Source: Ostrea edulis
Lineage: Eukaryota
Reading direction: 5' to 3'
Assembly: GCF_947568905.1 (NCBI RefSeq)
Contig: NC_079169.1
Location: 72,540,001-72,604,000, forward strand
Length of the DNA: 64,000 nt
Shown: positions 36,837 through 62,866 of the stretch, piece after piece
Position numbering within the stretch: position 1 is the first letter of the stretch
Layout: each line of letters begins with the position of its first letter
Position numbers and translations under genes: made by a program
Notes under the pieces: generated by a model
What the model was told of the DNA's origin: nothing
The model's database searches: none
Seen by the model: only the letters and a program-made list of their open reading frames with translations

Positions 36837-37386
36837 GCTTTTGAAATACTCTCAGTATGTTTGTTTTTAGTAACAGTTTTCGAAACCTTTGGCGTTGTGG
36901 AAATGTTTTGTATTCATACATGCATCAACTTTTGTCGATTAGTTAGACTTTCAGAGATGTTATAGGAATAAGATTTACATGAAAAGTGAGTCCTGCATTG
37001 TCCTCAGACGACATACTAGTCTACACATTTCAGATGGACAAATAGACAATATAAGTTTTATACATTTTATTCAACAATCAAAATACAGCACATCCCTACT
37101 GATCTGGTCGTCTTACCCCTGTCAAAAGGAAAGAAGAAAAATCATAAGTATTTGTTCCTCTCTTTCTACACAAACCAAATCTCGAATTGGGTATCTTTAC
37201 ACGGGTATGCTTGGATACAAAAGATATAGTCTTCATGTAATGTTTTGATAAATTTGTCAAGTATTCGAACTCTTAATGATATTTTTAGGTTGATTACCGG
37301 GGATTATATTGCTGAGATCATAGAATAACAAAAACACGCACCTGTTAGTTGCTTACGCTTCCCCCACTCAGCAGTTTATATGGAGT

Positions 37387-37975
37387 CTAACCAATAATGG
37401 GGAGAGCCGTGTTGTTGGTCAAGGCGGTCAACAGAAGGACCAGAGGAACTAAAACAGAAACATTTCTATCTTACAACTGGTCAAATGATTTAAAGGGAAA
37501 ACAAGAAATTTTTCTCTATCGAATTGAAGACATATAGCTTGTAACAAACTTTAGCAAAAACGATTCTTGAATTAATAACAGGTATCAATATTATCAAAAA
37601 TATTATATTAATTTCAAACATTTTATAAGAACTGTTTTCAACTAAAACGATGGCTGAATAAAAAGACTCACTGTAGTTAACAAAGGATGAGAAGGCGGAT
37701 TGTTTGGCGAGTTTGTTCAGCTGGTTTCTCTGTTGGCGGGTCTGGTACCACTCTTGGAGGTATCTTTGTTGGTAGGCCTGTCTACTAGCATAGTTCCCTT
37801 GTCCTCCATACCCGCCACCAAGTCCTCCATACCCGCCGCCAAGTCCTCCATACCCGCCGCCAAGTCCTCCAAGGGCTGAAGTCTGTGATCCTGGATAATA
37901 ATACAGTCCTTCAACCACGACAACGGCCAGTGCGATCACGCAGGGTAAAACCATCAAGATGACGGACTTATTCAT
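37387..37975 (-). CDS. Uncharacterised secreted Gly/Tyr-rich protein P1 (121 aa, 2 coding exons)
   Basis: Exons 37975-37672 and 37448-37387 (phase 1, GTGAGT...TTTTAG). Protein: MNKSVILMVLPCVIALAVVVVEG-LYYYPGSQTSALGG(LGGGYGG)x3-QGNYASRQAYQQRYLQEWYQTRQQRNQLNKLAKQSAFSSFVNY-IPLVLLLTALTNNTALPIIG*. TATA at 38074-38067; 3'-UTR exon from 37118; AATAAA at 37071-37066. Confidence 0.85.
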
Positions 37976-39289
37976 GCTGCTGGTTAGTGTGAGCTGAAAG
38001 CGAATCCCCGACTTGTGGAATACTCAGGTGATGAGAGGAGATTGGTGATGTGCTGGTTCGTCGAGATATATATACCGATTTTTTTGTCGGTTACGTGAAT
38101 TGCGATTCCGGGTGTTACGTCACGGCTTCACAGGTACGTTAAAGTAGTCTGCGTGAAGTAACGATTGTCGAAATGGGGTAACACTTTTTAGGGAAGAGTT
38201 TCTCTGTAATAGGAGCAACCTGTGTAACTTGTGATACTGACTATTTCTATAGGGTATTTCTATAAACGTGGATACGCTGTATTAGTATAGAAAACGACAC
38301 TTCCTTATCAGTTAAATTACTATTGATTTTTGCTACATAAAAATTCTAATAAAATATATTAAGGTCATCCAAAGTATATAGAGTTTAAATTTTTCGCACA
38401 TTCAGAAATACTGATATGTAATTATATGGACGAATTGGTAAATTAATGTCTCTTCCTCAGAAATTTGAAGTTGACAGTTTGCCCTGGGGAGTGGTTCTAC
38501 AACATTGCAATTTACAATCCCGAGAACATATTTCTGTTGTTCATGAATAATGATAATAATAAAATTTATATAGCGCCTTAAATAAAACAAATTACTCTAA
38601 GACGCTTTACAGGGGTAAGAGGAGGAATGCGACGATCAAACAGAATTAAATGAAATTAAATGACAGTATGACATAAGATCAAATTATCAAAATAAAACAC
38701 TATAATTAAGCTAAAAGGTGTTGGGTATTTTTTAGTGTACGTACTCTGTTGTTTTCCCTGTTCTTCGCTAGAATTAATTTTTTTTTAAAATTCCATCGTG
38801 TCTTTCAAATTAATTTTACAAGCATTTTTGTTGAAAATATTAATCCGTTCTTTGTTTGTTTTTAATTTTTTTTTTTAAAATACGTTAAGAAATTCGTTAT
38901 TCCCAAGTGATTCAGAGTTATGAGATCTTTTTTGTTTACAGTTAAACAATTTTTTTAAAATTAATTTGTTGTATTGAGATATTGTGGACTTCGATACTCA
39001 TTGAGTAATGTATTCATTTAATGTCGACTGATACAAATATATATCCATACATATGTATTACATTACAAATGGCAGACATGTACATGTATAAGCAAAATGA
39101 TCCAGTGATTTAAGATTAAAGCTAGGAAATTGTACGTAGTAAAGAAATATCACTAGGCAGGCTCAGGCAACCTCGTGGTCCAGAGCACAGACCCCTAGGC
39201 TATCCCACATAAGTTGTTTTCCAGCAATATTCTAACTGAATTTAACTTGGTGTACAAAGTATTCAAATCCATACAAAACACAAACGACC

Positions 39290-39535
39290 GGTGGCGGTGG
39301 CCCAGTGGTTGTGGCATTCACCTCGCCACGTGGAGACCCGAGGCTGGCGCCACGTCAAACCTTGGAAATTTAACAGGTTGTTCTTTTGGATATCATCTTA
39401 AACACTGAGATAGACGTTGGCACGATAAAGAATCATCACTGCAACGAACGTAAGCGCAGTGCATGTGTCCGAATTCGTGACACTTTACCTAAAGCTTTTT
39501 GACGTCTGGAACGTAAAACAAAATACTAAGAATAC
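39290..39535 (+). mobile_element. Degenerate tRNA-derived SINE
   Basis: GGTGGCCCAGTGG...CATTCACCTCG head and GTTGGCACGATAAAGA..CAC..C body motif. Confidence 0.55.
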
Positions 39536-39929
39536 AAATTTCGTTGAAAGGATTTTAAAAGGGTTTGGAAAGGTTTATATTTTGTGGCGGAAAGATTGCT
39601 TAATCAAAAAGCTATAACAAATGCTCGATTTTACCGTTTCTTTTTCATCTAATGTATTGTCAATATCTATACTCCTACATGTAGATGTACCCGCGTGTAA
39701 AGATGTTGTTTGTGATTGTCAATTTTCTATACATGTTTACCAATTATCAAAACGTATGGGGTTTTTTTATTTATCGATTTACTCATTTAAAATGGGTTTC
39801 CTTCAGTAATATAATTAAGTGTGCAGTGTGTTATACGTGTATATTGTTTGTTGGTTTTTTGTTTTGTTTGTTTTTGTTTTTGTTTTTTTTACGAAGTTGC
39901 GGCTTGAGTAATAAAGATATCCAATAACA

Positions 39930-40329
39930 ATATTTTCCAGGTGATATGAAGAAAATTTACACAATATAATCTGGTGTGGAGAATTTGATTTAGTTTTGAA
40001 CCCAGCTCTAGATTCTTATAATTATAAACATATAAATAATTCAATGGCTAGAAACAAAATATTAGAAATTATAGAGTCGCATGGTTATGTAGACCCCTTT
40101 AGAGAGATCAATGAAAATCTTCGTAGATAATCATGGCGGAAAAGATCCCCACTTAAACAAAGTAGACTAGATTTTTTTTACTATCTGCATCTTTACTGTC
40201 AAGCTTAAGTACTTGTAATATTGAATCTAGTTACAGATCAGACCACTCTGCAATATCTTTGTCATTAACTTTCAATGAATTAAAAAAAGGAAGGGAGCTA
40301 TGGAAATTCAACAACTCCCTACTTTACGA

Positions 40330-40371
<42 letters not shown>

Positions 40372-43300
40372 TTAGAAATTAAATTACACATGTTAAAAAA
40401 CAATATGCAGTCCCGGTTTACAACATGGATAATTTACACAGACTTCCAGATGATTTTTTTCACTATCAATGATCAGTTATTCCTTGAAACCTTGCTATTT
40501 GAAATAAGAGGTAAAAGTATTTCTTATTCTTCTTAAAGACAAAGAGGAGCAGGGTTTAATGGGGAAAAATAAAAAGTATTGAGGAAAATATTTCTAAAGG
40601 CAATGAAAATGAGTTACATGATAAACAACAAAACTAGAAAAAATTAGAAAGCATAAATTACAAGGAAATTATATAAGAAGCTGAGCTAAATGGGTAGAAG
40701 AAGAGGAGAAATCATCAAGGTATTTTTGTCAACTCGAATCAAGAAATTTTACAAGTAAGATCATTTCAAAGTTGAAAATGGATAGTGGTGATATGATACA
40801 TGATCAGTCACAAATTTTGATTGAAACGAAATCATTTTATGAAAATTTATATAAAAACAATCTAGATAATGCAGATTTAGATATAAATATTGAGCTAGTA
40901 TATGATGATATTCCTAAACTTTCAGAAGGGGAGTCTAAAAGCCTGGAGGGGGAAATTACTTTACCTGAGGCATCAAGGACACTCCTCAATATGAAATCAA
41001 TTAAATCACCAGGATCTGATGGTTTTTCTACTGAGTTTTTCAAAGTCTTTAGGAAACATATTGGTGTGTATGTTCTTAGATCTATTAATTATGGATATAT
41101 AATTAATATGCTGTCCTTCACATAAAGACATGGTGTAATTACACTGTTACCAAAGGGAGATAAACCAAAACACTATTTAAACAACTGGCGACCAATTACA
41201 TTGCTAAATACAGTCTATAAAATTGCATCCGGATCTATTGAAGTTAGATTTATAAAATATTTAGATAAATAATGGACCCAGATCAAACAGGATTCATATC
41301 CAACAGGTATATAGGCGAAAACACTAGATATATGATATAATGCATTATACTGAAGAAGAAGATATTCCCGGTCTTTCATTACGTATTGATGTCGGGATAG
41401 CCTTTGATACTTTATCATGGGATTTTATACAAAAATTTTAAACTTCTTAAAACATTGGTCCTTCCATTAGAACATGGGTTAAACTCGTCTACACAAATAT
41501 AACATCAACAATTGACCAAGGTGTCAACCTATCTGAAGTCTTTGATATTCATAGAGTTTGTAGACAAGGGGATACTTTATCTCCGTATGTTTTTTTATAT
41601 GTACAGAGATTTTGGCAATTAAAATAAGAAATTTAAAAAAATAATAAAGGCATAACTGTTGGTAATGTGGGGAAAAAAATCTCAACTTGCTGATGACACA
41701 TCAATTATTCTTGATGGTAATGAAAAGTCTTTCAGAAACTCTTAAAACTCTACATGCTTTCTCAGAAATGTCTGGACTATGTATGAATTACACAAAAACT
41801 CAAACAGTATGGATTGGCTCAAAAAATACAGTAACGATGTTCTTATTCCCAACAGTAAACCTAATTGGAGTACCATTAAATTCACTTTACTAGGAATACA
41901 TCTTGATGTCGATTTGCAAAATATGCCCAAATTAAATTATGATCCAAAATTAGTAAAAATCAAATATATTCTAAATAATGAGGGAAGAGGTACATGTATT
42001 TAACTCCCATTGGCAAGATAACAGTTATTATAATTCTTTATTGCGAAAGACATACATCTTATAGCATTATAACAAACTTGAACATGGATAATAATTACAA
42101 AGCTGAAAATAAACGGCCAATTCTTACAAAGACATCTAGCATACAATAGTATATAGTAAATACAATTATAGTATAATGATAGTAAAAAAGGAGAATGGCA
42201 TTAAAACATTAGGTCACCATTGTTGAATCATATCCTGATGTCCATTCCTAACCCATCTAATGCCTCTTGTAAAGAATTAGACAAACTATTTTTCTCTTTT
42301 GTGTGGGGTTGTTCAACCCTCAGGGTAAAGAAGGATGTAATTGTCAAGAAATATGAAAATGGCGGTCTAAAAATGATAGATTAAAAATAATTTATAGTTT
42401 CAATGAAATTGTTGTGGGTAAGACATCTTATCTCTACAAATAGGGGGTTGAGTAATTTCAAATCAAAATTTAACGTAAGTAAATTCACATCCTGTGGGAT
42501 TGAATACGCTAATCTATTTTTAAAATAATTAAAAACAAATTTTTGATAAATGTATTCAAGGCTTGGATTGAATTACAGAACACTTGTACAGAGTCTGATG
42601 TTACTGCAGATTCACCTTTGTTTTACAACCCTATGATCCATATTAGTAAGAAAATGTATTTTAATAAACATTTATTCGACAATAATATCAGACACATTAA
42701 TGATATTATTGAGGAAGATGGTACTTTTTCAGTCACGGGACTCTTAGTGCTACTTATCCAAAAGTGAAAATTAACTACTTAGAATATACAAGTATTATTC
42801 ATGCTATAAAAACTTGGATTAAGCAGTCAGGTACAGACACTAACTTTAAAAGGTTACCAAATCTTTTTATCAGAAGAAACATTTAATACAATGTATTGAA
42901 AAGAAAAAAATCAAAGTTCTTTTATGAATTTTTAAAAAGAGATGGATTCAGATTTTAGATATGGATAACAGAGAATGGAAAATTTTCAACATACTACCTT
43001 TCAAAATAACTTAAAACTGCAAACTCCAATGATTTCAATACAAAATAATTAACCGAATTTTAGCAACAAATTCATTTTTATTCAAAATTAAGGTAATTCC
43101 ACCCCTCTAGAATTATAGGTTCAATCTTATATTTGATTGTTGATTCTTCAAATAATATATCTTATTAACAAATAAAAATGATAAAATAAATATGTTTCGG
43201 TATTAATATTTCACAAAAACTGGTTGAAACGATATACAATATGTAATAGTATTCATAACAATTTCATGAAACAGTTTCTTTGAAAAATATACAAAATGTT

Positions 43301-43500
43301 TGTGAGAAATCTATCGCATAATGGATTTGATAAATAATTTAATGAAAACAGAGTCATTGCCCTTAAATTCAATATTTTGTTACATATAATTGATTATTCA
43401 TATATAACTTAGACTTTTGAAATATATGGTTAACAAGATTTTTTACAATAACAATTGAAAAAGACTCCAACAAATGTTATGTTCCTGTCATGCATAAATC
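39930..43500 (+). mobile_element. Decayed L1/Tx1-clade LINE (endonuclease + RT + C-terminus)
   Basis: Broken frames with G(D/E)F.LVLNP.LD, RLDFF, SDHS, WKFNNSLL, KSPGSDGFSTEFFK, NWRPITLLN, RQGD.LSP and LADDT. Confidence 0.85.
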
Positions 43501-45261
43501 TTATTAAATCATTGACTTTGCGAAATCTTGCATAATATCTCAATTTATGAATAAATTTCGCAGGAAAGCATATGCTTACGGAAGAAAGCATTAATTCAGG
43601 AATATATGGAAACAAATATATCTACTGTACACTTTCTAGTTTTATTAAACACCTCAACACAAGTCCGACGATCGGGGCAAGTTTGACACTACCGCGTATT
43701 TATGATCAATTATCAGGGCAACGCTTTGTTTTATTGTCACCTTTATATGACCAATAATTACGTGTTATCTGTGTAAGTTTATGCACATGCTGTCAGTAAA
43801 TAAAACCAATCGTATTCAAAATTAATGTTGTGCACGGGATGTATGTTATATGTATTCCGTAACCATATGCTTTCCTGCGAAATATATTAATGAATTAAGA
43901 TAATATGCAAAAACAAACCTCGACCATCTATATTGCCGCTTCGGTACCCTACACCCCGGTCACAACATACATGTAGCCTATACCCCGCATGTTGGGGTAT
44001 ACTCGGTGGAGTGTTGTTGTTTTTTTCCATAGGTTCAGTAATTCTAATTCTATTTATGAACAATTTCGAGAGCGGGATCTGTCTAATGATTATCTTACAT
44101 ATAGCAACTTAGGGATCACTAAAGCGTTTATTTCTTTGCTTTTTCCTGCTTCTCTGTTGTTGTTTTTGTTGTTGTTGTTTTTTTGGTGGTGGTTTTTTTG
44201 TTTGTTTTTTGGGGTGTTTTATTTTTCAATAGTGAGTACATGTACATAACTATTTTATTTCATATTGTATCATATCTTTTACAATTCTAATATCACTTAT
44301 CATTATAAGGGATAACAGACACTTGGTTTGGTTTGGGATTTGGACCGATGCTGTATGTAGCCCCCCCCCCCCCCCCCCCCCCCCCCCAATAAAATATAGC
44401 TTTCCATCGAAAAACTGGCTGTGTAGTAGTTTACCTCACACGGAAAGCTGGCTATGTAGGTGGGACACCCCCTCCTTATTATAGAAAGATTACTCCCGAT
44501 TAAAACCTGCTATGTAGTTGACTTCCGTTTCTTTCCATTCCAGTTATGTTAATAGCGGGTTGCTCTTTTCAATGATATGCAATGTTTGACAATCTTCATG
44601 CAATGTAATTTTACCATACAATCGGACACATTTAGCATCTAAAATAAAATAATAATTAAGTTTAAATTCAACGTTATTCAGATGAAAATAAGTAAAGCCT
44701 TGTCATTTACAAATTAGCCAATCAGATTCCAACTAAATTCAGAGCGCGTGCGTGTCTCTGTTGGTATCATATGTTGTAGATTTATCATATGATTAACGAA
44801 GTAATCCGATGAAACCAATTAAAACATTTTATGAATTAATATGACGGACAAAACACACTACTTCATGCATAAAATGGTGAAGATAACGACCAGTGACTAA
44901 AGAATACAAAATTAAGAGCAGGACAAGTTTATGTAACATACAGCATCTGTTTTACAAACATCGAAAGCCCAATTCACTTTCCATAAATTTAATGAAAACC
45001 CCATTACGTGTGAAATTCTACAATATAGTAAATCTTCTCCCAGGGAATGGATTTCTTTCTACGTTTTTCTTTTCAATCAGCACCACGGAGCTATGTTGGG
45101 AACGCTACGACGGTTGAAGACAGTACCTATATACCCTTTAACCCTATTCAAGAAGGATGAAATCAAAAGTCGGGCTAGATATTTAGCTATGCCGTTTAAG
45201 GGCATTGCTCCTATAGGTTATTGGTTTTATGTTTGCTAATGTCTTGTATCATTAGGAAAAC

Positions 45262-45746: not shown

Positions 45747-46089
45747 CTTACTCTGCTTCTTTACTTCTGTTTTCAGGGGAGAACACTGATATTCTTAGGC
45801 TGTACTTGGCGAAACTTGCGTGTAAAATTAATACCATGGATGCAGTACAAAATGTTTTCGGTTTGTATTAAGTGGGTCATGAAATGGAAACTTAATCAAA
45901 TGTAATTAGTAATGAAGTTATTAGATTTAATCTATTAGACATCCATTATTAATTATTCTGTGTCTGATTTTATAAAGTAAAAATCTCTGCAATATAAAAT
46001 GTCCTTGTCCAAAACTTAACATACAAGATACTTGGGGCCACTGGAGACAAAACAAGTTACATTTAATTCCACGTTTATTATCACATTTC

Positions 46090-46368
46090 TATGTTACGAT
46101 ATACGGTATGAGATTTGTATGGCTTTAGGAATGCTATGTTACGATATACGGTATGAGATTTGTATGGCTTTAGAATGCTGTGTTACGATATACGGTATGA
46201 GATTTGTATTTGTATGGCTTTAGGAATGCTATGTTACGATATACGTATGAGATTTGTATGGCTTTAGGAATGCTATGTTACGATATACGGTATGAGATTT
46301 GTATGGCTTTAGGAATGCTATGTTACGATACACGTATGAGATTTGTATGGCTTTAGGAATGCTATGGT
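46090..46368. repeat. 45-bp minisatellite x~6
   Basis: Unit AATGCTATGTTACGATATACGGTATGAGATTTGTATGGCTTTAGG. Confidence 0.92.
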
Positions 46369-46384
46369 ACTAATACGCATATGC

Positions 46385-47170: not shown

Positions 47171-47386
47171 TTCCCATCAGTAAATGTTTTCATTGTTCCC
47201 ATCAGTAAATGTTTTCATTGGTCCCATCAGTAAATGTTTTCATTGGTCCCATCAGTAAATGTTTTCATTGTTCCCATCAGTAAATGTTTTCATTGTTCCC
47301 ATCAGTAAATGTTTTCATTGGTCCCATCAGTAAATGTTTTCATTGGTCCCATCAGTAAATGTTTTCATTGGTCCCATCAGTAAATG
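47171..47386. repeat. 25-bp minisatellite x8-9
   Basis: Unit (T/G)TCCCATCAGTAAATGTTTTCATTG. Confidence 0.95.
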
Positions 47387-49826: not shown

Positions 49827-50550
49827 TTATCCAACGAGAGGAATTGACGTGGAGTTGGAGAACGCCAGCAAGGTAAGGATCCCCGGCACTGAAAGGCAAA
49901 TAAATTGTTATGTGTTAAGTATTATGAAAATGAAGAGTCATCCCAATTAATATATTTCTGAAAAGAAATGACCATATAACAAAACACTATACCCTAATGC
50001 ATTATAAGTACTGCTTTTATTTTAAGTTTGATTATAAACATCAAACAACAAAAAATTAAGTCTAACATTTTGATGGAAATGGAATAAGTCTAGCACTTGT
50101 AGTAATATTTTGAATTTTAATTATTATAGTGAATGCTTATGGATAATAATACCTGTAATACATAATCATATTTTGTTCTGCAGTTGCATTCTAGATTAAT
50201 ATAATTCATTGAACGTGTTGAAGGGAGGGGCACATAAAGAGGAAAAAATAATTCATACCCAAGGCACTCCATTTGGTGAAAGTTGATGCCCGGGCCAGAT
50301 CATTGAGGGCGTTTCTAATGACAATGGTCCTGGACGCTTTTCGCTGCCAATCTCTCAATGCCATTCTGTAAGCTATAACATTCCGCTGATATTTCTGTCT
50401 CTCTGCGGAGTTAGCCCCGTATACACCTCCCGCCATACCCGGGTAAGCCCCGTGCATTCTATACCCTCCCATATTATACTGGGCGCTCACTTCCACTGCC
50501 ACGTAAGCCAGCAGGCAGACTCCGGCTATGAAGAAAAATTGTTTATTCAT
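49827..50550 (-). CDS. Uncharacterised secreted Gly/Tyr/Met-rich protein P2 (117 aa, 2 coding exons)
   Basis: Exons 50550-50259 and 49888-49827 (phase 1). Protein: MNKQFFFIAGVCLLAYVAVEVSA-QYNMGGYRMHGAYPGMAGGVYGANSAERQKYQRNVIAYRMALRDWQRKASRTIVIRNALNDLARASTFTKWSAL-VPGILTLLAFSNSTSIPLVG*. TATATAAA at 50633-50626; UTR exon from 49398; AATAAA at 49339-49334. Confidence 0.85.
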
Positions 50551-51493
50551 CTTCAAAGCTCTCTGATCGAACGAATCTCCTACTTTTCCCGTCTTATGGA
50601 GATCTCAGAACATGGATGCCTTCTGTTTATATATGAGCGGGTTTGTTGCGCAGTAGGAAAGCATGGCCCTACAGCGATTCGTGATGGGTTTTGTAACTGC
50701 CGCTGATGTATGCTGCGTCCATTCCGTCTTCGCTGTAATAGCGTTTCCGCGAATCAATCTACTCTGTCAATTTGCACAAGAGGCTCATAAGAATAGCAAA
50801 AGACAGTGTGATAAGAATAAAGCCTAGTACTAGTGATTGTAAAGGGTTAACCCCATTTCGAGTAGTAATTAATGGTTTTGTAAAATTATTCGACCAAATA
50901 ATTGTTGGTGAATTTTATAACATAACAAAAAGTCTGTTTTAGAATACCAGATTTAACATTGATTTTATTTCAGAACGAGAAATTATCATATATTATGCAT
51001 TTTACAACCGTGTGCGAAAAACGAAAGGGAATAATTCTCATGTAACTTTGACGATATTCAAAGATTTTATATAATTTTATTATAGGCTTTCTGTGATAAT
51101 CTGTGATAATTGTTTCTTGAATCTTGTTTTCTTTTTGGGTCTAAAGACTACGTTTGTTCATCAGAACCGAATGACAGGTATACACAACATAACCTTCGTA
51201 ATACCTCGTCTCACTCCATCTTCCCGCTACACCACAGTGCGGAATACAGGTACGAAACGGCGTGAGAGACCCTATATTGCTTACTCAGTGTTACCTAACA
51301 ATACAGCTGAATATACACACAACCGATCTATCTTTCGTGTCCCTATTATCCTATTATTACAAAAAGGCTTCTGAAACGTTCATTAACCAATGGCAACGGA
51401 AGTCACGTGATATTTGGCGGTATTTAAACTGCTCTAGCAATAGTTCACCAATCTCCATTTTTACAGTACCAACCCAAAGGGGGATTCGCCACC
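50551..51493. promoter_or_regulatory. Divergent promoter region of P2 and P3
   Basis: Outward-facing TATA boxes at 50633-50626 (-) and 51421-51428 (+); CCAAT at 51387-51391 and GGAAGTCACGTGA (ETS/E-box-like) at ~51398-51410. Confidence 0.65.
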
Positions 51494-52370
51494 ATGAATA
51501 AAGCTATTTTATTCATCGTCGGGACGCTGTTGGCAGTCGTTATAGTGGTCCATGTAAGCCATCTTCATACCATCCCGGATCATCTAATATATCTGTGATA
51601 TTTTATGGAAAATGAATATATGAAAAGTTTAATTTTCTAAATTTTAAGGTGACTAGATATTCTGCCAGAGGGTAAAACTCGACTATATTCTTAATTACTG
51701 TATATTCATTTTTATTTCTTTGGTATAAAAAAAGGAAGAAAAATATCCATTATTATTTATTGTTATATTAAAACAAAGTAATTTGAACGCAATTAATGAA
51801 AAACAACAATATTCTGATTTAGTGCCAGCGAGTGATGGTGATCAGACCTCAGGCCAGAAGATCAAACTTGGGTGCTTACAACATGTACAACCAAATGGCC
51901 AGCGCCCGTCAACCTTCGTTCTCCCAGCAAGATGGATATCTGTATGCCCTTGGCATCAACCAACAATACACGGAGGCCAATGAAGCACAGAATCTTCTAA
52001 GGACCGTACAAGCCATCAGGCAGGCAACCTATGACTCCAGAATGGGATCACTGCTTAACCTTTGTAAGTGACCTTCCTAAAAAAAAATGTTAAACGTTAT
52101 TTAAAGAAACTAAGAACTAAATATGAACTAAAAGTAGGTTTAACTTTTTTCTTACTGTCAGTTAACTATTGAAATAGGCCTATATGATTATTTATCTGAT
52201 TTCTTGGCAAAGTACGAAGTTTGAAATAGAAATAGTATTGGAAATAAGTTGATGAAAACTATTTTTGAAACGAATTTTACATCCATCAACAAATTTGGTT
52301 TTTCTTTGCAGTGTTTACTCTCGCCATCAGTTTATTGGCCACGAACTCCACTGGTGCTGTAGCCGGTTAA
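51494..52370 (+). CDS. Uncharacterised secreted Gln/Tyr-rich protein P3 (119 aa, 3 coding exons)
   Basis: Exons 51494-51553, 51823-52063 and 52312-52370. Protein: MNKAILFIVGTLLAVVIVVHC-QRVMVIRPQARRSNLGAYNMYNQMASARQPSFSQQDGYLYALGINQQYTEANEAQNLLRTVQAIRQATYDSRMGSLLNL-LFTLAISLLATNSTGAVAG*. UTR exon from 52528; AATAAA at 52578-52583. Confidence 0.85.
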
Positions 52371-52824
52371 ATCATATGAATGAGGCTTCAAGATCTATTC
52401 TCTTATTTGGTAATATACCTTTAAACATAGTATATAGAGCCTATTCCATCCTTGTGTTTTAAGAACTTGTGGACTTTTTAGACTTTAGACTTCTACATAA
52501 GATTCTTTAATACATTTTCTATTTTAGGGATGGGCGACCACAGACATTGCGTGATGTTAACTATATGCGTTTCCTTCAATAAAATCATGTACACTTTTTG
52601 TTTACTTTCTATTCTGTATATATTAATGGAATGGCATACATGTATAATGTGATATGCGTCGAATAAAAGAATTGCGACCTTTTGTTCATAGTTGAATTTG
52701 TTAATGTAATGGCCAGGTATCATCTTATATAGAACAACTACCAGAGCTACTATGAATATCAGTTATGAAACGTTTACTATGTTTGAGAAGAAACTTTGTC
52801 GATTCAATGAAGAAATGAGTTTCA

Positions 52825-56196: not shown

Positions 56197-56375
56197 NNNN
56201 NNNNNNNNNNNNNNNNNNNNNNNNNNNNNNNNNNNNNNNNNNNNNNNNNNNNNNNNNNNNNNNNNNNNNNNNNNNNNNNNNNNNNNNNNNNNNNNNNNNN
56301 NNNNNNNNNNNNNNNNNNNNNNNNNNNNNNNNNNNNNNNNNNNNNNNNNNNNNNNNNNNNNNNNNNNNNNNNNNN
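56197..56375. other. Assembly gap (179 N)
   Basis: Run of N. Confidence 1.
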
Positions 56376-57030
56376 ACTCAACATCCAAAGTGTCGGATCT
56401 AATAGTAGATACGAGGTCAAATAAAAAAGGATATAAAAAGCACTAAAAATGACCAACGACACGAACAACAGTGAATTGTTAAATTTTCAGGACAACCTGT
56501 CCCTCCCTCAGGACAATAGAATATTTACATAGAAAAGAAAACTAAATAGAAAAGGAAACTAAAACTACAACTAAACTACAAAAGCTGATAACAAACAAAA
56601 CGTCTACATATTAAAATTATTGAGTGCAATGTGTGGCAATAGAAAAGTTTGTTCCCATCGAGCGTCAAGACAGATCTGAACCGACTTGTCCTACGCTGGA
56701 TCAAGTTAAAAAAAACAGGAATTTTCAGAACAAACTGTCCCTTCTATCTATCTACACAAATGTATCTGCCTATCTATCTAGCTACTTAGCACTATAATCC
56801 AACAACACTCAACATCCAAAGTGTCGGATCTAATAGTAGATACGAGGCAAATAAAAAAGGATATAAAAAGCACTAAAAATGACCAACGGCACGAACAAGT
56901 GAATTGTCAAATTTTCAGGACAACCTGTCCCTTCCTCAGGACGATAGAATATTTACATAGAAAAGAAAACTAAAACTAAATAGAAAAGGAAACTAAAACT
57001 ACAACTAAACTACAAAAGCTGGTAACAAAC
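56376..57030 (-). mobile_element. Tandem 431-bp repeat (1.5 visible units) with hammerhead-like motif
   Basis: ACTCAACATCCAAAGTGTCGGATCT at 56376 and 56807; same family as 16915-17190. Confidence 0.65.
56903..56945 (-). ncRNA. Candidate minimal type I hammerhead ribozyme
   Basis: ATCGTC-CTGAGGA-A-GGGAC-AGGTT-GTCCT-GAA-AATT-T-GACAAT contains the full core CUGANGA/GAAA/UH, a 5-bp stem II, stem I GTC:GAC and a palindromic stem III. Confidence 0.5.
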
Positions 57031-58173
57031 AACCTTATATTACCTTTAACAGGTAACAGGCATCTATAATGTTGACTGGAATATTGGATTAGCAGCCACA
57101 TGAGCCAGACTTATCCTGAATCTGACTAGCACAGGGTCCAGAGGATTAAACTAAAGCAAAGGACACAAATACTATTACCGACGTTTTGTCAGTAGTAAAT
57201 CTTGGATGTTTTATTCTTCATAATTCTCCATGTATACTGCAACATGAAAATAACATTTTGATTTAACATAAAACCGTATTTTGAAAACTAAGAAAATAAA
57301 AGGAATGAAATGTCTGGATTTGGTTTGTTTTTTGGTTTTTTTTTTTTTGGTTGTTTTTTTGTTGATAATGTTGTTGGTTTTTTTTCGTGGAATGGCCCTC
57401 GTATTTCTTTCCGCATTTGATTAAGAAAGTGTAATGAGTTTCTGCAACCTTTCACCCAGAGATTTCTTTATAAGAACATGTAAATCATTTATTATAGTGA
57501 CAGGTGCATTTTACATACTACATAATTTGATACAATATACGGTAATTAAACTGTTGCACCCGGCCCATTTGACCCACAAGTCACTTTTATACATTATTTC
57601 AGTTTAAATACGTACACACGTCGTGCATATTAAATTAATTGTGCAAATGTCGTTTTCTTACTTGAGATGATACAGTAAGAAATTGTGCAGTTTGTCTTTT
57701 ATTATTTACCATTAAAATGTTTAGATTGATATTTACTTCTACATTTATAGTTCGAAAGAATGTTTCTCAATGGTTTTCGAAAATTTTGCAATATAACAGA
57801 AAATGTTTTTTATCCTCTGTGAATCCATCATGACATAAAGTAGAAAAACGTTCATGTGGAGGTTTATTTACGTAACGAACGAGGGCGAGGATTCCACGTC
57901 TGAACTGAACCATCCCGGACCTTTCTTGTTACGTATGGTTCGAGTTAGAAATTGTGTGAAGGTGTTCGCAATTTGGGTACAGGCGATATTTTTTGTCTCC
58001 AATGTTCTTCACAAAATCTTTTCACTTTCACTTGATTTATATCACAAAGACGTATATAGTTGTAATGAGAGCACATGTCTAATTTAATTAAATAGGATTT
58101 CTTTCATTTGTAAACACCATGTACCGTTGTTCCGATAGCTCCATGAAAAGACTTTTTGGTAAGAAGTTCGTTG

Positions 58174-58626
58174 CAATCTCTCACCAGAGGGCGTTACGCT
58201 ACGCTCCACAACACCTCTGTTATCGTCTAATTTACAAGAATTTTGTAAAACAGATCGTCTTTGAAAATAAAATAAATCTGCATCATTTTCATAAATAAAA
58301 CATACATTGATGAGTTAAAAACACATTGGTAGGTATCGAAACGCTGTATTACGTTAGTGCAACCTCCATATCTATGGAACTATTTTGTCTTGTCAAATGT
58401 ATTATTTCACTTTCACTTCGTAACTATGGACTCTACATTTAAAAAAAACTAGAGAGATTATAATGATGAAAACCTGACATTGCACAAAGAACAGAAACAT
58501 GCCTTTCTGTTGGAGTCAAAGACGTCATTTTGTCCGTGCGAGATCATGTGGTTAGCCGAACTATTTATCAGACGATAACAGAGGTGAAAGTGAAGCTTGC
58601 GTAGCGCGCCCTCTGGTGAAAGAATG
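58174..58626. mobile_element. Mutator-like MITE, same family as 30983-33748
   Basis: CAATCTCTCACCAGAGGGCG... / ...CGCCCTCTGGTGAAAGAATG; 10-bp TSD AAGTTCGTTG / AAGTTCGTCG. Confidence 0.8.
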
Positions 58627-59209
58627 AAGTTCGTCGTCCATTTGGATTCCATTTTCTCACCAGTCAGTTCCGCTGTGTCGGTGTTAACCGTCCTACTTCA
58701 CTGTTTGAGATGATAACTGGAGCATATATAGGTGTAATCAATCCAACGACACCATGTTGTACAGTTTCTAACGGTTGATATGTTTTAAATCTCCACACCC
58801 CTGTACAATAAAATAAAACATGAATACAAGATTGGACAAGTTTTTCAAAAGTTTGGAATCCGACATCTATATAACTATGAATTTTTTATCTCGAAGTTCT
58901 GTCAACATATTTACCGAGAGTTTCCGCTGCTATAATTGAATTCATCTTTCGTTAAATATAACACCGAGATAGCGACTTACATATTGTAGCTCTTCTTCTC
59001 CAATTTTGAATTTATAATAACTTAGAGGGATGTTGTGTTTCCTGAAATGCATTACGTTTGATTTAATATAATTCATACTTAATCCCCACCGTTTACACCA
59101 ATTAAAAAGGATCACTGTTCGTTATCTTCACCTTTCATACCAAGGGAATTTTATATATCAACCTCATTTTCACTGAGAATAGCAATATCGTTGGCATTTG
59201 ATAAAATGT

Positions 59210-59545
59210 TCATTTTTTCCATCTTCAATATTAACACCCGCATTTAGCTGTGAAATTTCTGTCGTGAAGTCGTTGATAAAGACAGAGAACAGTGTGGGTG
59301 ATAAGTTGTCACCTTAACGTACGCCATTTGAGCACTGAAACCAATTCGTACGAAGATCGTTGACTCAGACACAGAAAATTGTTTAAGAATATAAGCTAGA
59401 AATAGCGTTATATATATATATATATATATAGTACCATTGATTCCAATTAGTTGTAGTTTGTTTTGTAGTAAATCTCTATTGACGAAATCAAAAGCTTTTT
59501 GAAGGTCAATGAAAGTTACTAGACAACTAAACAAATGCAAAACTG
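59210..59545 (-). mobile_element. LINE reverse-transcriptase fragment
   Basis: Minus strand FIDLQKAFDFVNR and GVR*GDNLSPTLFSVFIND motifs, disrupted. Confidence 0.75.
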
Positions 59546-60150
59546 TAAAACATGCAAAATGCTTTAGATTAATTTTTAACTGCCAAGAGAGTTGTTTGTT
59601 TTTCTTTTCAATAAGAACTACAATGAAATACGATAGATATCTCATAGATAATATATAATATATAAATAATATCTTTGAATCATAATATTAAAACAATTTC
59701 AGATTTAATTAATTGGGCAATCAATAGAATTAAAAAAAAACAATTAGTTTTAAAATGAAAATGAGATAAACAAAAATGGTTCAAACATTATATTTCTTAA
59801 CTTTTACCTTTATAACGCGCTTTAATTATATAAGGTGTTATGTGAATTTTTTTTTTTTTTTACAATTATTTTTTGAAGCGCAGAGCTACCTACATGAAAT
59901 TGATTAACTAATCAAACTATCTTCCTTATACTTCCACAGATAATGTTTTAATTTACAAATTTATTCATCATATAACTATCAGGGAAGTATTAGGCTTCTT
60001 GTTTTCACATGCCTAGCGGCTTCCACACAAACACACCTGCATGCTCACTCTACGTAATTCCTTTTTGCAGCCGAGTATACGGGTAAGAAACCAATATATT
60101 ACGACACATGGAAGCAGACGCACTTTTCATACACCTTTCTATATTGCAGA

Positions 60151-60226
60151 TTACGTCAAACTGCCGTCTGCTGTAGGAGGGTGGGAGAGTATAAAAGCAG
60201 ACTAAACCATCGAAGATTCGTCACTT
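60151..60226 (+). promoter_or_regulatory. Core promoter of P4
   Basis: TTACGTCA (CRE/ATF-like) at 60151-60158, TATAAAAG at 60190-60197 and Inr-like TCACTT at 60221-60226. Confidence 0.7.
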
Positions 60227-60256
60227 GCTCGGTCCAGTCGCCAATCACACACAACC

Positions 60257-60791
60257 ATGAACAAGGCAGTCATTCTCCTCGGCACCTCTTGCCTTCTTGC
60301 CATCGCCATCATGCAGGTGTCCGCTTATTACTATGGCAACTCGATGATGTACGGTGGTGCGGGATATCCTTTATCCATGGCCGGTGGTGCTGGAGGTCTT
60401 GGTGGTGCAGGAGGTCTCGGTGCTCGTAGTAATTACTATGACAACTACTACAGACAGTACGATCGCTACAACCGTGCCCAGGCTACCAGAACTATTGCCA
60501 GATCCATCAATGGTCTCCAAACATCCGCCCTCCTCAGTCTGTGTAAGTTAACATTACTCCTGGACACTTCCAATCGTGTCTTCCCGATATGATGAAATAT
60601 TTAATTTTGAAAGAACATTGATTTAGAGTTTAGGTTATTAATCTTATGTTCTTGTTAATTGGTTTGTCAGATAAATAAGCCAAACATATGTACGATTTTT
60701 TGTTTTAAAGATAAGCTTTCTTTATTTTTCAGTTTCTCTGTTCGGTCTCGCCATGCTTGCCACCAACACCACTGGTACTCTTGCTGGTTAA
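60257..60791 (+). CDS. Uncharacterised secreted Gly/Tyr-rich protein P4 (114 aa, 2 coding exons)
   Basis: Exons 60257-60542 and 60733-60791 (phase 1). Protein: MNKAVILLGTSCLLAIAIMQVSA-YYYGNSMMYGGAGYPLSMAGGAGGLGGAGGLGARSNYYDNYYRQYDRYNRAQATRTIARSINGLQTSALLSL-FSLFGLAMLATNTTGTLAG*. UTR intron 60830-60943; AATAAA at 61007-61012. Confidence 0.88.
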
Positions 60792-62866
60792 GAGAGCTTT
60801 TAAGACATCTTAAAAAGTCCAACTGACAGGTATGTTTGTTTTTATTCTGTTAATAAATTTCTGACTTTCATTATAAAACAAGATGCACGAAAGACTTATT
60901 TTTCAAACTTTACCATTAACAAACAATTCTTCTCCCTTTTCAGGGGTTTGACGACCAGACCAGAGGGTGTTGCTTGATTGTACATTGTATGCTATCTTAT
61001 GTGTTGAATAAAACTCTAAATAAACAAATGATTCTTCTTTGTGCTGATATATGTAAAACCTAAATTCATATCACACAAGCTCTTTGCACTATATGAGTGT
61101 TTGATTATTAGAAGGTCATCAAAATGTTACAACAAATCGGGTTGTTGAATATTGTGAATTTGTAAGTATATATTAAACTCCCAAATCATAAAAAATCAGT
61201 GAAGCATAAGCTGTATTTCATGAGCCATGTTTAATTTCAAATTGTAAATTACGAAATAGTGAGAAAACCCCACGAGTTGGAGACATTTGTTTGTTGGAAA
61301 ATACTAGTTAGCGCTTCATAGAAGGTATGCTGGTGTGAAGCGATAGAAACTCAACAACGTCTACTTTCTTAAAATGTCAGATATAAAAAGATACAAGGCC
61401 AGAAAATAGATTTATAAAAGCATTGAAAAGGCCACGACACTGTTATATAAGCACAAGCCGCAAGGTAGTCATCTAAGAAGTAGAGCCAACTGGGTTGAAA
61501 AAGGCAAAAAACCATCGAAATATTTCTGTGCTTTAGAATCCAGAAATTTTGCTAGCAAAACAATCCCTAGATTAGAAAATAATGAAGGGGGGGGGGGGGG
61601 GGTAATATATGAACAATCTGAAATTTTGAGGGAAACAAAAACTTTTTATGAACTGTTATACAAGAAAACAATTTTCATTTTAACAATGAGTCAAGCTTTA
61701 AGATATTTCTAAACGTTCTAGTATCAATACAAGGGGAAATTACTCTTGAAGAAGCCACCAATACTCTTTATAAAATTAAATCTAAAAAAGTCCGGTATCT
61801 GGTGGGTTTTCTGCCAAATTCTTCAGGGAAACAAAAACTTTTTATGAACAATTATATAAGAAAACTGAAGTAAATAATAGTTTTGATTTTAACAATGAGC
61901 CAAGCTTTAACGATATTCCGAAACTTTCTAATAAAGAATCAGAATCAATAGAAGGGGAAATTACTATTGAAGAAGCCTCCAATACTCTTTACAATATGAA
62001 ATCTAATAAATCCCCAGGATCTGATGGTTTTTCTGCCGAATTCTTCAAAATGTTTTGGAAATATATTGGTATTTTTGTTGTAAGGTCTATCAATTATGGA
62101 GATAGAAATAAAATGTCAATTATACAAAGACATGGTATCACTATATCGCTACCGAAAGGTGACAAGCCAAGACAATATCTAAAGAACTTAAGACCTATCA
62201 ATCTGTTGAATAATGTTTATAAAATTACATCAGACTCAGTGGCTAGTAGAGTGAGACGGTATCTATATAAATTAATCAACCATGTTCAAACAGGTTTTAT
62301 TCCCAATAGATATAAAATGGGAGAAAATACAAGGCTTATTTATAATAGTATGCATTACACTGAGGAAGAAAATATACCTGGTTTATTATTACTTAACGGT
62401 TTTGAAAAAGATTTGATACAGTGTCTTGGGAATTTATTAAAAAAGCACTTACTGTCTTTAACTTTGGCACCGAAATTCAGAAACGAGTTTCATTATTTTG
62501 TAAAGATATTACATATGCAGTGAATGATGGTGGCAGTGGCGTAGCTTCCATTGAGGCAACCGAGGCAGCTGCCTCAGTAAAAAAAAAAAAAAACAACACC
62601 TTTTACGTTGTTAAAATGTCGATAGCTTCTGGGGGCTGTGCCCCCCCCCCCCCGACCCCCTGCCTCAGTAATATTCGAACCCAAGCTACGCCTATGGGTG
62701 GTCATCTGAAAGAATCGATGTTCAGAGAGGGTGCAGACAAGGTGACCTTTTGTCGCCATATCCTTTCTTAATTTGTGCAGAAATGTTAGCAGTTCAGATA
62801 AGATTAAACAAAAATATTAAAGGTATCACTGTAAACAATATAGAAAGGACGGTATCTCAGTGGGCT

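What the first reader, a model, noticed from the sequence alone, without database searches (positions are those of the whole stretch)
37066..61012. Unrecognised four-gene family of small secreted proteins: variable Tyr/Gly-rich body joined to a conserved tail exon
Hand splicing gives four paralogues (P1 37975-, P2 50550-, P3 51494+, P4 60257+; 114-121 aa). All begin MNK plus a signal peptide. Each has a variable low-complexity Tyr-rich body (Gly-rich in P1, P2 and P4; Gln-rich in P3), then an Arg/Gln-rich helix-like segment, a phase-1 intron and a 19-20 aa hydrophobic tail exon. The tail exon is invisible in the ORF track. The bodies are barely alignable while the architecture is fixed, as expected for a diversifying precursor family. 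Established background: Gly/Tyr-rich secreted proteins such as shematrins and prismalin-14 build bivalve shell and adhesives through tyrosinase/DOPA chemistry. As I recall them, those proteins do not have this tail. Function (structural/adhesive versus membrane-active defence peptide) is inference.
Basis: partly seen in the sequence, partly recalled or inferred. Interest (0 to 1): 0.9.

Follow-up and report, generated by a model that had tools for sequence, protein, structure and literature searches.

The report
Oyster small secreted tail-exon protein family
Four neighbouring flat-oyster genes encode a real, conserved family of small secreted Gly/Tyr-rich proteins that all end in the same short hydrophobic tail; gene databases already predict some of them, but no function has been described.

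Summary
Observation confirmed. The window is Ostrea edulis. Four small genes (P1 37387-37975 minus, P2 49827-50550 minus, P3 51494-52370 plus, P4 60257-60791 plus; 121/117/119/114 aa) share five features: an MNK signal-like start, a Gly/Tyr body (Gln/Asn/Tyr in P3), a polar Arg/Gln-rich segment, a GT-AG phase-1 intron, and a 19-20 aa tail exon with an invariant N-x-T and a terminal Gly.

The N gap lies between P3 and P4 and touches no exon.

My P1 and P2 splices equal RefSeq XP_048730235.1 (mis-named "ACP-20-like") and XP_048730264.1. Annotation therefore already sees the tail. Nearly all members are labelled "uncharacterized", none has a Pfam or PDB match, and I found no paper.

The same cluster, strands and intron positions occur in Crassostrea gigas and angulata and in two Saccostrea species. 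Pinctada has a P1-like gene, and there is an unlinked fifth paralogue. Crassostrea RNA-seq contigs splice the tail junction of the P3 orthologue.

Orthologues are under purifying selection (tail dN/dS 0.08-0.24). The bodies change by repeat slippage, not by diversifying selection.

Function is inferred. My preferred reading is low-complexity secretory proteins that keep a marginally hydrophobic, probably glycosylated tail. The rivals are a GPI anchor and an amidated-peptide precursor. The scan also noted three similar genes elsewhere in this genome (s1-279248).

The parts
37672..37975 (-). P1 exon 1 (coding part): MNK start, signal-like h-region, a GGLGGGY repeat body and a Gln/Arg/Tyr-rich segment. 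The donor GTGAGT follows at 37671.
   Evidence: ORF; splice model; identical to RefSeq XP_048730235.1. A 21-bp tandem repeat at 37801-37871 encodes the Gly/Tyr body.
37342..37448 (-). P1 tail exon: coding 37387-37448 (20 aa, ...NNT...IIG, stop), then 45 nt of 3'UTR up to a second donor.
   Evidence: The tail is 93% identical among orthologues, with dN/dS 0.11.
37060..37118 (-). P1 last exon (3'UTR only), with a GACGACCAGA motif and an AATAAA signal at 37066-37071. The 5' boundary comes from the AG acceptor; the 3' end is approximate.
   Evidence: Inferred from similarity to P4 and to the spliced 3'UTR of Crassostrea P3 transcripts.
50259..50550 (-). P2 exon 1 (coding): MNK start, VSA|Q cleavage-like site, a Gly/Met/Tyr body and an Arg-rich polar segment.
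   Evidence: With the tail exon it equals RefSeq XP_048730264.1.
49827..49888 (-). P2 tail exon, coding part (20 aa, ...NST...LVG, stop).
   Evidence: Orthologous RefSeq models carry the same tail.
51494..51553 (+). P3 exon 1 (coding): MNK plus a hydrophobic 20 aa, followed by a phase-0 intron.
   Evidence: This junction is spliced in the Crassostrea transcript contig L003.
51823..52063 (+). P3 exon 2: a Gln/Asn/Tyr-rich body and a conserved polar segment.
   Evidence: Orthologues are 91% identical in the last 45 aa.
52312..52410 (+). P3 tail exon: coding 52312-52370 (19 aa, ...ATNSTGAVAG, stop), then 40 nt of UTR up to a donor.
   Evidence: The orthologous junction is spliced in 11 Crassostrea RNA-seq contigs; nine were aligned to the genome.
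52515..52632 (+). P3 last exon (3'UTR), approximate.
   Evidence: Maps to the last exon of Crassostrea transcript contigs L003 and L013.
60257..60542 (+). P4 exon 1 (coding): MNK start, VSA|Y site, a Gly/Tyr/Met body and an NYYDNYYRQYDRYNR segment.
   Evidence: An 18-bp repeat lies at 60382-60422.
60733..60829 (+). P4 tail exon: coding 60733-60791 (19 aa, ...ATNTTGTLAG, stop), then 38 nt of UTR.
   Evidence: Saccostrea RefSeq orthologues carry the same tail.
60944..61030 (+). P4 last exon (3'UTR), with a GACGACCAGA motif and an AATAAA signal at 61007-61012. The 3' end is approximate.
56197..56375 (.). Assembly gap. It is intergenic (between P3 and P4) and not part of any gene model.
   Evidence: No family-like ORF lies on its flanks.

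Best explanation
SHOWN.
- P1-P4 are four ancient paralogues of a gene family found in oysters (Ostreidae) and a pearl oyster (Pteriidae).
- Each encodes a ~100-130 aa, Cys-free (after residue 23), cationic protein. It has an N-terminal signal-like peptide, an indel-prone Gly/Tyr(/Met) or Gln/Asn/Tyr low-complexity body, a conserved polar Arg/Gln/Asn/Tyr segment, and a conserved C-terminal module.
- That module is 11-15 hydrophobic residues, then an invariant N-x-T, then 4-6 residues ending in an invariant Gly.
- The proteins are under purifying selection. The helix and tail are the best-conserved parts.

INFERRED (my preferred mechanism).
- The signal peptide is cleaved (VSA|Q and VSA|Y type sites) and the whole chain enters the ER lumen.
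- The tail is too weakly hydrophobic to act as a stop-transfer anchor. It stays on the mature protein, and its N-x-T is glycosylated.
- The proteins are secreted as small, sticky, low-complexity matrix-type components (periostracum, ligament, cement or mucus-like secretions). The Tyr/Arg-rich disordered body would provide cohesion or cross-linking. The hydrophobic, glycosylated tail would provide self-association or attachment.
- The repeat body tolerates length change. The tail does not.
For: Gene models and RefSeq identity.

Spliced tail junction and 3'UTR intron in Crassostrea RNA-seq contigs compared with the genome.

Conserved four-gene cluster, order and strands in C. gigas, C. angulata, S. 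echinata and S. cucullata. The same phase-1 intron and the same 62/59-nt last coding exon occur in Pinctada and in the unlinked P5 gene.

Regional selection: tail dN/dS 0.08-0.24, helix 0.03-0.22, body 0.12-0.43 with 20-40% gaps.

The N, T and G of the tail are invariant across all 16 sequences tabulated, while their codons vary synonymously. extend this to the other members seen. This is selection on the amino acids.

The hydrophobic core of the tail is short. The best 19-residue window sums to +1.4 to +5.6 kcal/mol on the Hessa scale. It is less hydrophobic than the same protein's signal peptide in 14 of 16 sequences; the two Saccostrea P4 proteins are the exceptions.

A simple small-x-small omega-site rule finds no candidate in 5 of 22 sequences and no conserved candidate in the P1 and P3 groups.

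Composition is Gly/Tyr-rich with a net charge of +3 to +9. The body is encoded by 21-bp and 18-bp tandem repeats and varies in length within C. gigas.

The nearest language-model neighbours are small secreted structural or cuticle-like proteins, but the scores are weak.
Against: - There are no expression, proteomic or localisation data for any member, so the tissue and the material are guesses.
- Signal cleavage, glycosylation and tail retention come from rules of thumb. I could not run SignalP, NetGPI or DeepTMHMM.
- The Hessa sum is a crude calculation without position dependence, using scale values recalled from the 2005 paper.
- A marginally hydrophobic C-terminus with no cytoplasmic tail is also the hallmark of a GPI signal.
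- The invariant terminal Gly has no explanation in the matrix-protein reading.
- The AlphaFold model is poor (pLDDT 52).
- Fully spliced transcripts were assembled in very few public runs. Expression may be rare or restricted.
Confidence: 0.4

Rival explanations
1. The tail is a GPI-attachment signal. After signal-peptide cleavage the last ~25-30 residues are replaced by a GPI anchor. The product is a ~70 aa Gly/Tyr-rich cationic protein tethered to the outer face of epithelial or haemocyte membranes. This layout resembles small GPI proteins such as Shadoo or the N-terminal half of PrP.
For: It has an N-terminal signal plus a C-terminal, marginally hydrophobic, uncharged ~24-residue end with no cytoplasmic residues. 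Marginal hydrophobicity is what GPI signals are reported to need (recalled from Galian et al. 2012, not checked here). The P2, P4 and P5 groups have rule-compatible omega candidates 24-33 residues from the end. A separate terminal exon for the anchor signal is common in GPI proteins (general knowledge).
Against: No conserved omega-type small-x-small site exists in the P1 and P3 groups, and none at all in 5 of 22 sequences. The tail is among the best-conserved parts of the protein. Its invariant N-x-T and terminal Gly are kept through synonymous codon changes, which a discarded signal does not need. Polar residues fill the last 9-10 positions after the hydrophobic core.
Confidence: 0.25
2. The genes are precursors of C-terminally amidated peptides. 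The terminal Gly is the amide donor. A basic site in the Arg-rich segment releases a ~35-45 aa cationic-then-hydrophobic peptide, which acts on membranes (defence) or as a signal.
For: Gly directly precedes the stop codon in every member seen. Signal peptides are highly conserved (85-93% identity, dN/dS 0.07-0.19) next to a more variable body, as in toxin and antimicrobial-peptide precursor families (the comparison is general knowledge). RQQR is conserved in oyster P1 and RR occurs at the matching place in Pinctada. The proteins have a net positive charge. A weak Atlas neighbour is a nematode Gly/Tyr peptide family.
Against: No basic cleavage motif is conserved across all paralogue groups. The putative product is uncharged over its last ~24 residues and shows no amphipathic periodicity. 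The N-x-T would add a glycan, which is unusual for such peptides. The part upstream of the putative cleavage site is also under purifying selection.
Confidence: 0.12
3. They are small integral membrane proteins. Either a hairpin is formed with an uncleaved N-terminal anchor plus the C-terminal segment, or, for P3, a signal-less isoform starting at MVIRPQ behaves as a tail-anchored protein.
For: Both hydrophobic ends are unusually conserved. AlphaFold draws one long helix running into the tail (low confidence). Ten of the 11 Crassostrea P3 contigs are called as the 93-aa signal-less ORF that matches RefSeq isoform X2. Eight were aligned to the genome and all eight retain intron 1. The basic residues sit just before the tail, and none follow it.
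Against: The tail's best 19-mer is unfavourable for insertion in the crude Hessa sum, especially in P1 and P2 (+3.3 to +5.6). P2, P4 and P5 have textbook VSA|x cleavage sites. Intron retention may simply be unprocessed RNA.
Confidence: 0.08
4. The gene models are artefacts: chance ORFs in repeat-rich DNA or pseudogenes.
For: The bodies are low-complexity and partly encoded by tandem repeats. No O. edulis transcript was available here; the Logan contigs L018-L021 are colinear with the genome.
Against: Orthologues have intact ORFs, the same splice sites and dN/dS far below 1 in three other oyster species plus a near-identical locus in C. angulata. The same gene structure occurs in Pinctada. Spliced transcripts exist in Crassostrea. 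RefSeq models are identical.
Confidence: 0.01

Closest known systems
Shematrins, prismalin-14 and KRMP (Gly/Tyr-rich shell-matrix proteins of Pinctada; features recalled from memory)
   Same: All are small secreted molluscan proteins with a signal peptide and a Gly/Tyr-rich, repeat-encoded, length-variable body.
   Different: No sequence relationship was detected. A family profile searched against 1.84 billion proteins returned only 15 small oyster or pearl-oyster proteins, none of them a named matrix protein. Those families are not known to carry the polar helix plus hydrophobic N-x-T...Gly tail. Presence in shell was not tested.
Mussel foot protein 3 (mfp-3) type adhesive proteins (from memory)
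   Same: Both are small, cationic and rich in Gly, Asn, Tyr and Arg. The P4 stretch NYYDNYYRQYDRYNR looks like the Tyr/Arg/Asn runs of mfp-3. Oysters cement and pearl oysters make byssus.
   Different: The resemblance is compositional only. No homology was found. mfp-3 has no conserved hydrophobic C-terminal exon. DOPA modification was not tested.
Small GPI-anchored low-complexity proteins (Shadoo/PrP layout)
   Same: The order of parts matches: signal peptide, Gly-plus-aromatic or basic repeats, an N-glycosylation site and a hydrophobic C-terminal end.
   Different: Those are vertebrate families with no sequence similarity to this one. Here the omega-site rule is not met across the family. 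The sequon lies inside the putative signal rather than in front of it.
Insect adult-specific cuticular protein ACP-20 (the RefSeq name of P1)
   Same: The only shared feature is a Gly-rich low-complexity region.
   Different: There is no Rebers-Riddiford/Chitin_bind_4 domain even at E<=10. The name is an automatic low-complexity match and should not be carried over.
Nematode Gly/Tyr-rich peptides (NLP/CNC and the NSPB family)
   Same: Both have a signal peptide plus GGY-type repeats in a ~100 aa precursor. One such family is a weak Atlas neighbour (score 0.66).
   Different: A score below 0.9 is only a lead. The nematode proteins lack the helix and tail. No HMM hit was found.
Abductin (scallop hinge-ligament elastomer; from memory)
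   Same: Both are small secreted bivalve proteins with Gly/Met-rich repeats. P2 and P4 orthologues have runs such as MGGMGGLGG.
   Different: The Gly/Met stretch here is only 25-45 aa. No homology was detected. No tail is known in abductin. This was not tested directly.

Membership tests
This family (working definition) | MN[KR] start with a hydrophobic signal-like segment; a phase-1 GT-AG intron 59 or 62 nt before the end of the CDS; a tail with a hydrophobic core, N-x-T and a terminal Gly. | tested here: met
   All four window genes meet it. Orthologues in four other oyster species, Pinctada and P5 meet it too.
Insect cuticular proteins (ACP-20, Rebers-Riddiford) | Chitin_bind_4 (PF00379) consensus domain. 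| tested here: not met
   A Pfam scan of P0015 at E<=10 returned only DUF1127 at E=2.2.
Shematrin/prismalin-type shell matrix proteins | Signal peptide plus a Gly/Tyr-rich repeat body. | tested here: met
   Body composition: P1 has 20 Gly and 11 Tyr in 79 residues; P4 has 14 Gly and 11 Tyr in 72. Coding tandem repeats are shown.
Shematrin/prismalin-type shell matrix proteins | Detectable sequence homology to described members. | tested here: not met
   hmmsearch against 1.84e9 representatives gave 15 hits. All are small oyster or Pinctada proteins without a descriptive name where a name exists.
Shematrin/prismalin-type shell matrix proteins | Recovered from shell matrix by proteomics. | not testable with these tools
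   No proteome data can be searched here, and no paper mentions any accession.
GPI-anchored proteins | An N-terminal signal and a C-terminal uncharged, moderately hydrophobic end with no cytoplasmic tail. | tested here: met
GPI-anchored proteins | A small-x-small omega site about 17-31 residues before the C-terminus, present throughout the family. | tested here: not met
   A rule-based scan found no candidate in 5 of 22 sequences and none conserved in the P1 or P3 groups. Candidates are conserved in P2, at 29-33 residues from the end. No trained predictor was available.
GPI-anchored proteins | Release by PI-PLC, or a GPI moiety on the mature protein. | not testable with these tools
   This needs an experiment.
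Amidated peptide precursors | Gly as the last encoded residue (or Gly followed by basic residues) after the peptide. | tested here: met
   Gly-stop occurs in every member, with GGT or GGA codons.
Amidated peptide precursors | A conserved mono- or dibasic processing site upstream of the peptide. | tested here: inconclusive
   RQQR is conserved in oyster P1 and RR occurs in Pinctada. Only single Arg residues align in P2-P5.
Single-pass or tail-anchored membrane proteins | A ~19-residue or longer segment with favourable membrane-insertion energy. | tested here: not met
   The crude Hessa-scale sum for the best 19-mer is +1.4 to +5.6 kcal/mol. Only a 15-residue core in P3 and P4 is near or below zero. 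This was a crude calculation.
Extracellular coiled-coil structural proteins | Heptad or amphipathic periodicity in the helical segment. | tested here: not met
   Fourier power at periods 3.5 and 3.6 is no higher than in shuffled sequences for any paralogue (z from -1.7 to +0.5).

The most novel reading that the evidence does not exclude
The tail is a previously undescribed, deeply conserved C-terminal module: a short hydrophobic core, an obligatory N-x-T and a terminal Gly, always joined through a phase-1 intron. In this reading it gives bivalve low-complexity secretory proteins a specific post-translational fate. Candidates are glycan-dependent sorting into secretory granules, C-terminal amidation, or a non-GPI attachment to membrane or matrix. 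At least five ancient paralogue groups use it, and possibly the three further Gly/Tyr genes noted elsewhere in this genome.
Probability: 0.2. Interest if true: 0.6.

Novelty: new variant of a known kind. Interest (0 to 1): 0.4.

Why it matters
Molluscan shells, ligaments, cements and mucus are built from lineage-specific low-complexity secreted proteins. Most of these are defined only by composition. This family has a sharply defined and testable signature: a fixed gene structure and an invariant N-x-T...Gly tail, kept in both true oysters and a pearl oyster.

If the tail proves to be an anchoring, sorting or processing signal, it would give a handle on how such sticky proteins are handled by the cell and placed in a material. 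It would also provide a search key for further members.

Practically, the result corrects a misleading RefSeq name ("ACP-20-like"). It also gives exon coordinates for P3 and P4 of O. edulis. No O. edulis P4 protein model turned up in the P4 protein search. P3 was never searched on its own, and no stored protein equals my spliced P3 or P4.

If the family is only another matrix-protein family, it is of routine interest.

Tried and rejected
- Pfam at E<=10, a PDB sequence profile search and two ESM Atlas searches (best scores 0.71 and 0.81, below the useful range). All gave nothing usable. DUF1676/Osiris and nematode NSPB appeared only as weak leads.
- AlphaFold2 on a 7-sequence alignment gave pLDDT 52 and pTM 0.20. 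I did not run a fold search on such a model.
- Coiled-coil or amphipathic-helix idea: no periodicity above shuffles. Dropped.
- Canonical transmembrane anchor: disfavoured by the crude insertion energy.
- Extra copies or pseudogenes in the window, including next to the gap: none.
- Tektin linkage: contig L003 joins the P3-orthologue transcript to a tektin cDNA after the polyA signal. Tektin is absent from the window, and nothing in L014 (about 10 kb downstream of P3 in C. gigas) matches L003 beyond position 560, where the tektin ORF lies. I treat it as an assembly chimera.
- O. edulis transcript evidence: the Logan contigs carrying P1 and P4 (L018-L021) are colinear with the genome, so they say nothing about splicing.
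- Literature: eight searches on accession numbers, LOC ids, SRA runs, the RefSeq name, oyster adhesives and ligament proteins found no paper on these genes. Two papers were read in part, and I found nothing that could be tied to this family.
- I did not type the spliced P3 and P4 proteins into the exact-match tools, because they have no stored reference. Whether RefSeq has O. edulis models for them therefore stays open.

Full report
WHAT IS THERE.

The exon-1 reading frames of P1, P2 and P4 are plain ORFs. P3 starts with a 20-codon exon.

Splicing at canonical GT-AG sites gives four complete proteins of 121, 117, 119 and 114 aa:
- P1, minus strand: 37672-37975 plus 37387-37448.
- P2, minus strand: 50259-50550 plus 49827-49888.
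- P3, plus strand: 51494-51553, 51823-52063 and 52312-52370.
- P4, plus strand: 60257-60542 plus 60733-60791.

In all four a phase-1 intron precedes a last coding exon of 62 nt (P1, P2) or 59 nt (P3, P4). The tails come in two styles. P1 and P2 have the pattern x-P-x-x-L-x-L-L-x-A-x-x-N-x-T-x-x-P-x-x-G. P3 and P4 end in L-A-T-N-x-T-G-x-x-A-G. Asn, Thr and the terminal Gly are shared by all.

A six-frame motif scan and a tblastn search find exactly four copies in the 64 kb.

The assembly gap at 56197-56375 is intergenic. It lies about 3.8 kb beyond the P3 stop and about 3.9 kb before the P4 start, so no claim here depends on continuity across it.

Each gene also has three further shared features:
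- A TATA-like box.
- A G[GA]AGATTCG motif 6-37 nt before the ATG.
- For P1, P3 and P4, a second intron about 40 nt after the stop codon.

WHOSE GENOME, AND IS IT ANNOTATED.

The P1 exon-1 query returned RefSeq XP_048730235.1, [quoted passage not shown], on a 93.5-Mb chromosome. Its sequence equals my spliced P1. P2 equals XP_048730264.1, "uncharacterized protein LOC125647580 [Ostrea edulis]".

The tail exon is therefore already part of public gene models. It is also in the RefSeq orthologues of Saccostrea echinata, S. cucullata, Crassostrea virginica and C. gigas/angulata. Apart from the one mis-named O. edulis entry, all are labelled uncharacterized or hypothetical.

The "ACP-20-like" label is not justified. 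There is no Chitin_bind_4 domain even at E<=10.

FAMILY, AGE AND RANGE.

Profile-profile comparison links the paralogues: P1-P2 98.7%, P1-P4 96.9%, and P3-P4 95.9% over the helix plus tail.

The cluster has the same order and strands (P1 and P2 on one strand, P3 and P4 on the other, with P2 and P3 divergent) in four other genomes:
- C. gigas and C. angulata (L014, L015).
- S. echinata (L001). Only the P4-P3-P2 part falls inside the fetched locus.
- S. cucullata (L002), with a tandem duplicate of P1.

Unique two- or three-exon models with the same intron position reproduce the annotated protein lengths everywhere. The one exception is S. cucullata P3, where two candidate splices fit the annotated length and I kept the one matching the other orthologues.

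A profile of the family searched against 1.84 billion representative proteins found only 15 proteins. They are oyster sequences, one Pinctada imbricata protein (KAK3087980.1, P1-like) and a fifth paralogue group. An example of that group is S. cucullata LOC134282839, which sits unlinked between Frizzled and tetraspanin genes. Both the Pinctada gene and P5 have the same phase-1 intron and the same 62- or 59-nt last coding exon.

The family is therefore found in both Ostreida and Pterioida. Nothing detectable lies outside them at this sensitivity. A scan note (s1-279248) reports three more Gly/Tyr genes with a phase-1 hydrophobic tail exon elsewhere in this genome. I could not inspect them.

TRANSCRIPT EVIDENCE.

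Eleven Logan contigs from RNA-seq runs encode the C. gigas-type P3 orthologue with exon 2 and the tail exon joined. I aligned nine contigs to the C. gigas genome (L003 plus eight of the ten retrieved for the 93-aa ORF). In all nine the interval 10971/2 to 11214/5 is missing. That interval is the predicted phase-1 intron.

The 3'UTR intron (11317 to 11530/6) is missing in L003, L008 and L013. Intron 1 is removed only in L003. The other eight aligned contigs retain intron 1. That matches RefSeq isoform X2, which starts at MVIRPQ and lacks the signal peptide.

I found no spliced O. edulis contigs. The four contigs carrying P1 and P4 are colinear with the genome.

For P1, P2 and P4 the junctions rest on three things: identity to RefSeq models, conserved splice sites, and coding-type conservation of the tail.

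HOW IT EVOLVES.

Among orthologues, the regions behave as follows:
- Tail: 72-93% identical, dN/dS 0.08-0.24.
- The 45 residues before the tail: 78-91% identical, dN/dS 0.03-0.22.
- Signal peptide: 85-93% identical, dN/dS 0.07-0.19.
- Low-complexity body: 43-74% identical, 20-40% gapped columns, dN/dS 0.12-0.43.

The sequon Thr uses ACC, ACG, ACT and ACA, and the terminal Gly uses GGT and GGA, while the residues never change.

The P1 body in O. edulis is a 98%-perfect 21-bp repeat (37801-37871), and P4 has an 18-bp repeat. C. gigas P2 alleles differ by whole GGY units.

This is purifying selection plus repeat slippage. It is not a diversifying arms-race pattern.

WHAT IT PROBABLY DOES.

The shown properties are these:
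- An N-terminal segment with VSA|Q and VSA|Y type cleavage sites.
- No Cys after residue 23, and a net charge of +3 to +9.
- A Gly/Tyr(/Met) or Gln/Asn/Tyr disordered body.
- A polar Arg/Gln/Asn/Tyr segment that AlphaFold draws, with low confidence, as one helix continuing into the tail.
- A tail whose hydrophobic core is only 11-15 residues. Its best 19-mer sums to +1.4 to +5.6 kcal/mol on the Hessa scale (crude, scale values recalled from memory).

That is too weak for a normal membrane anchor, though it is in the range expected of GPI signals.

A small-x-small omega site is missing from 5 of 22 members and is not conserved in the P1 and P3 groups. The most constrained residues of the tail are the N-x-T and the last Gly, and a discarded GPI signal would not need them.

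I therefore prefer a retained tail that is translocated and N-glycosylated, on a small secreted matrix or adhesive-type protein (confidence about 0.4). A GPI anchor (0.25), an amidated-peptide precursor suggested by the invariant terminal Gly (0.12) and a small membrane protein (0.08) are live rivals.

Nothing here tells the tissue or the material.

COMPARISON WITH KNOWN FAMILIES.

In composition the proteins resemble shematrins, prismalin-14 and KRMP, mussel mfp-3, abductin, and nematode Gly/Tyr peptides. In layout they resemble small GPI proteins such as Shadoo. None of these is a relative by any test available. To my knowledge none has this tail; that point is from memory, not tested.

The family is best filed as a new variant of the well-known class of lineage-specific, low-complexity secreted molluscan proteins. 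What sets it apart is its conserved helix-plus-tail module and gene structure.

VERDICT.

The interpretation needs trimming on three points. The genes are partly annotated already. The family is old and conserved rather than diversifying. It is also larger than four genes.

Interest is moderate. This is a clean, testable orphan family with an unexplained invariant C-terminal signature, but there are no functional data and many similar orphan families exist in bivalves.

Noticed in passing
L004-L013 (Crassostrea RNA-seq contigs) compared with L014:10001-11273; window 51554-51822: Ten of the 11 assembled P3-orthologue contigs are called as the 93-aa signal-less ORF of RefSeq isoform X2. The eight I aligned to the genome all retain intron 1 while splicing the tail intron. 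L004-L007 also run upstream through the intergenic region; L004 and L005 reach the divergent P2 gene, antisense to its first exon. This could be a real signal-less isoform, a long upstream transcript, or unprocessed RNA.
   Followed up: partly
L003:560-2961: One contig (SRR8427110) joins the fully spliced P3-orthologue mRNA, just after its polyA signal, to a complete tektin cDNA (425 aa). Tektin is absent from the window, and nothing in L014 (about 10 kb downstream in C. gigas) matches that part of L003. It is probably an assembly chimera.
   Followed up: partly
window 37801-37871 and 60382-60422; C. gigas P2 variants P0004, P0098, P0099: The Gly/Tyr bodies are encoded by near-perfect 21-bp and 18-bp tandem repeats. 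Their unit number differs between individuals of one species, so they behave as coding minisatellites.
   Followed up: partly
window 38001-38009(-), 50572-50580(-), 51480-51488(+), 60212-60220(+): A G[GA]AGATTCG motif lies 6-37 nt before each ATG and about 20-50 nt after a TATA-like box in all four genes. It is probably a shared initiator or 5'UTR element. Across the whole window the motif count is not above chance, so only its placement is notable.
   Followed up: partly
window 37103-37112(-) and 60950-60959(+); also 15079-15088(+): An exact GACGACCAGA motif lies at the start of the 3'UTR-only last exon of P1 and P4, after a conserved intron about 40-45 nt downstream of the stop (close enough to escape nonsense-mediated decay). 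This may be a shared regulatory element. A third exact copy lies in an unrelated part of the window.
   Followed up: no
window 36594-36834, 46089-46377, 47172-47386: Three tandem arrays lie in the intergenic DNA of the cluster: a G-rich 27-bp unit x9 just beyond the P1 polyA site, a 44-bp unit x6.4 and a 25-bp unit x8.6. The O. edulis cluster is much more spread out (P2 to P1 about 12 kb) than the Saccostrea one (about 3.5 kb).
   Followed up: no
window 2001-4000: This interval stands out in composition (GC 0.41, GC skew +0.37, against about 0.34 and about 0 around it). Not examined.
   Followed up: no
L002:13990-14472 and 18951-19430; RefSeq LOC133190125 and LOC133190126 of S. echinata: P1 is tandemly duplicated in both Saccostrea species, and the two copies encode identical proteins. 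This indicates recent duplication or gene conversion.
   Followed up: no
P0057 (C. virginica XP_022297232.2) and P0013 (M. gigas A0A8W8NFD3): Two public models of the P4 orthologue are wrong. One has a 94-aa spurious N-terminal extension. The other has a mis-spliced C-terminus that lacks the tail.
   Followed up: partly
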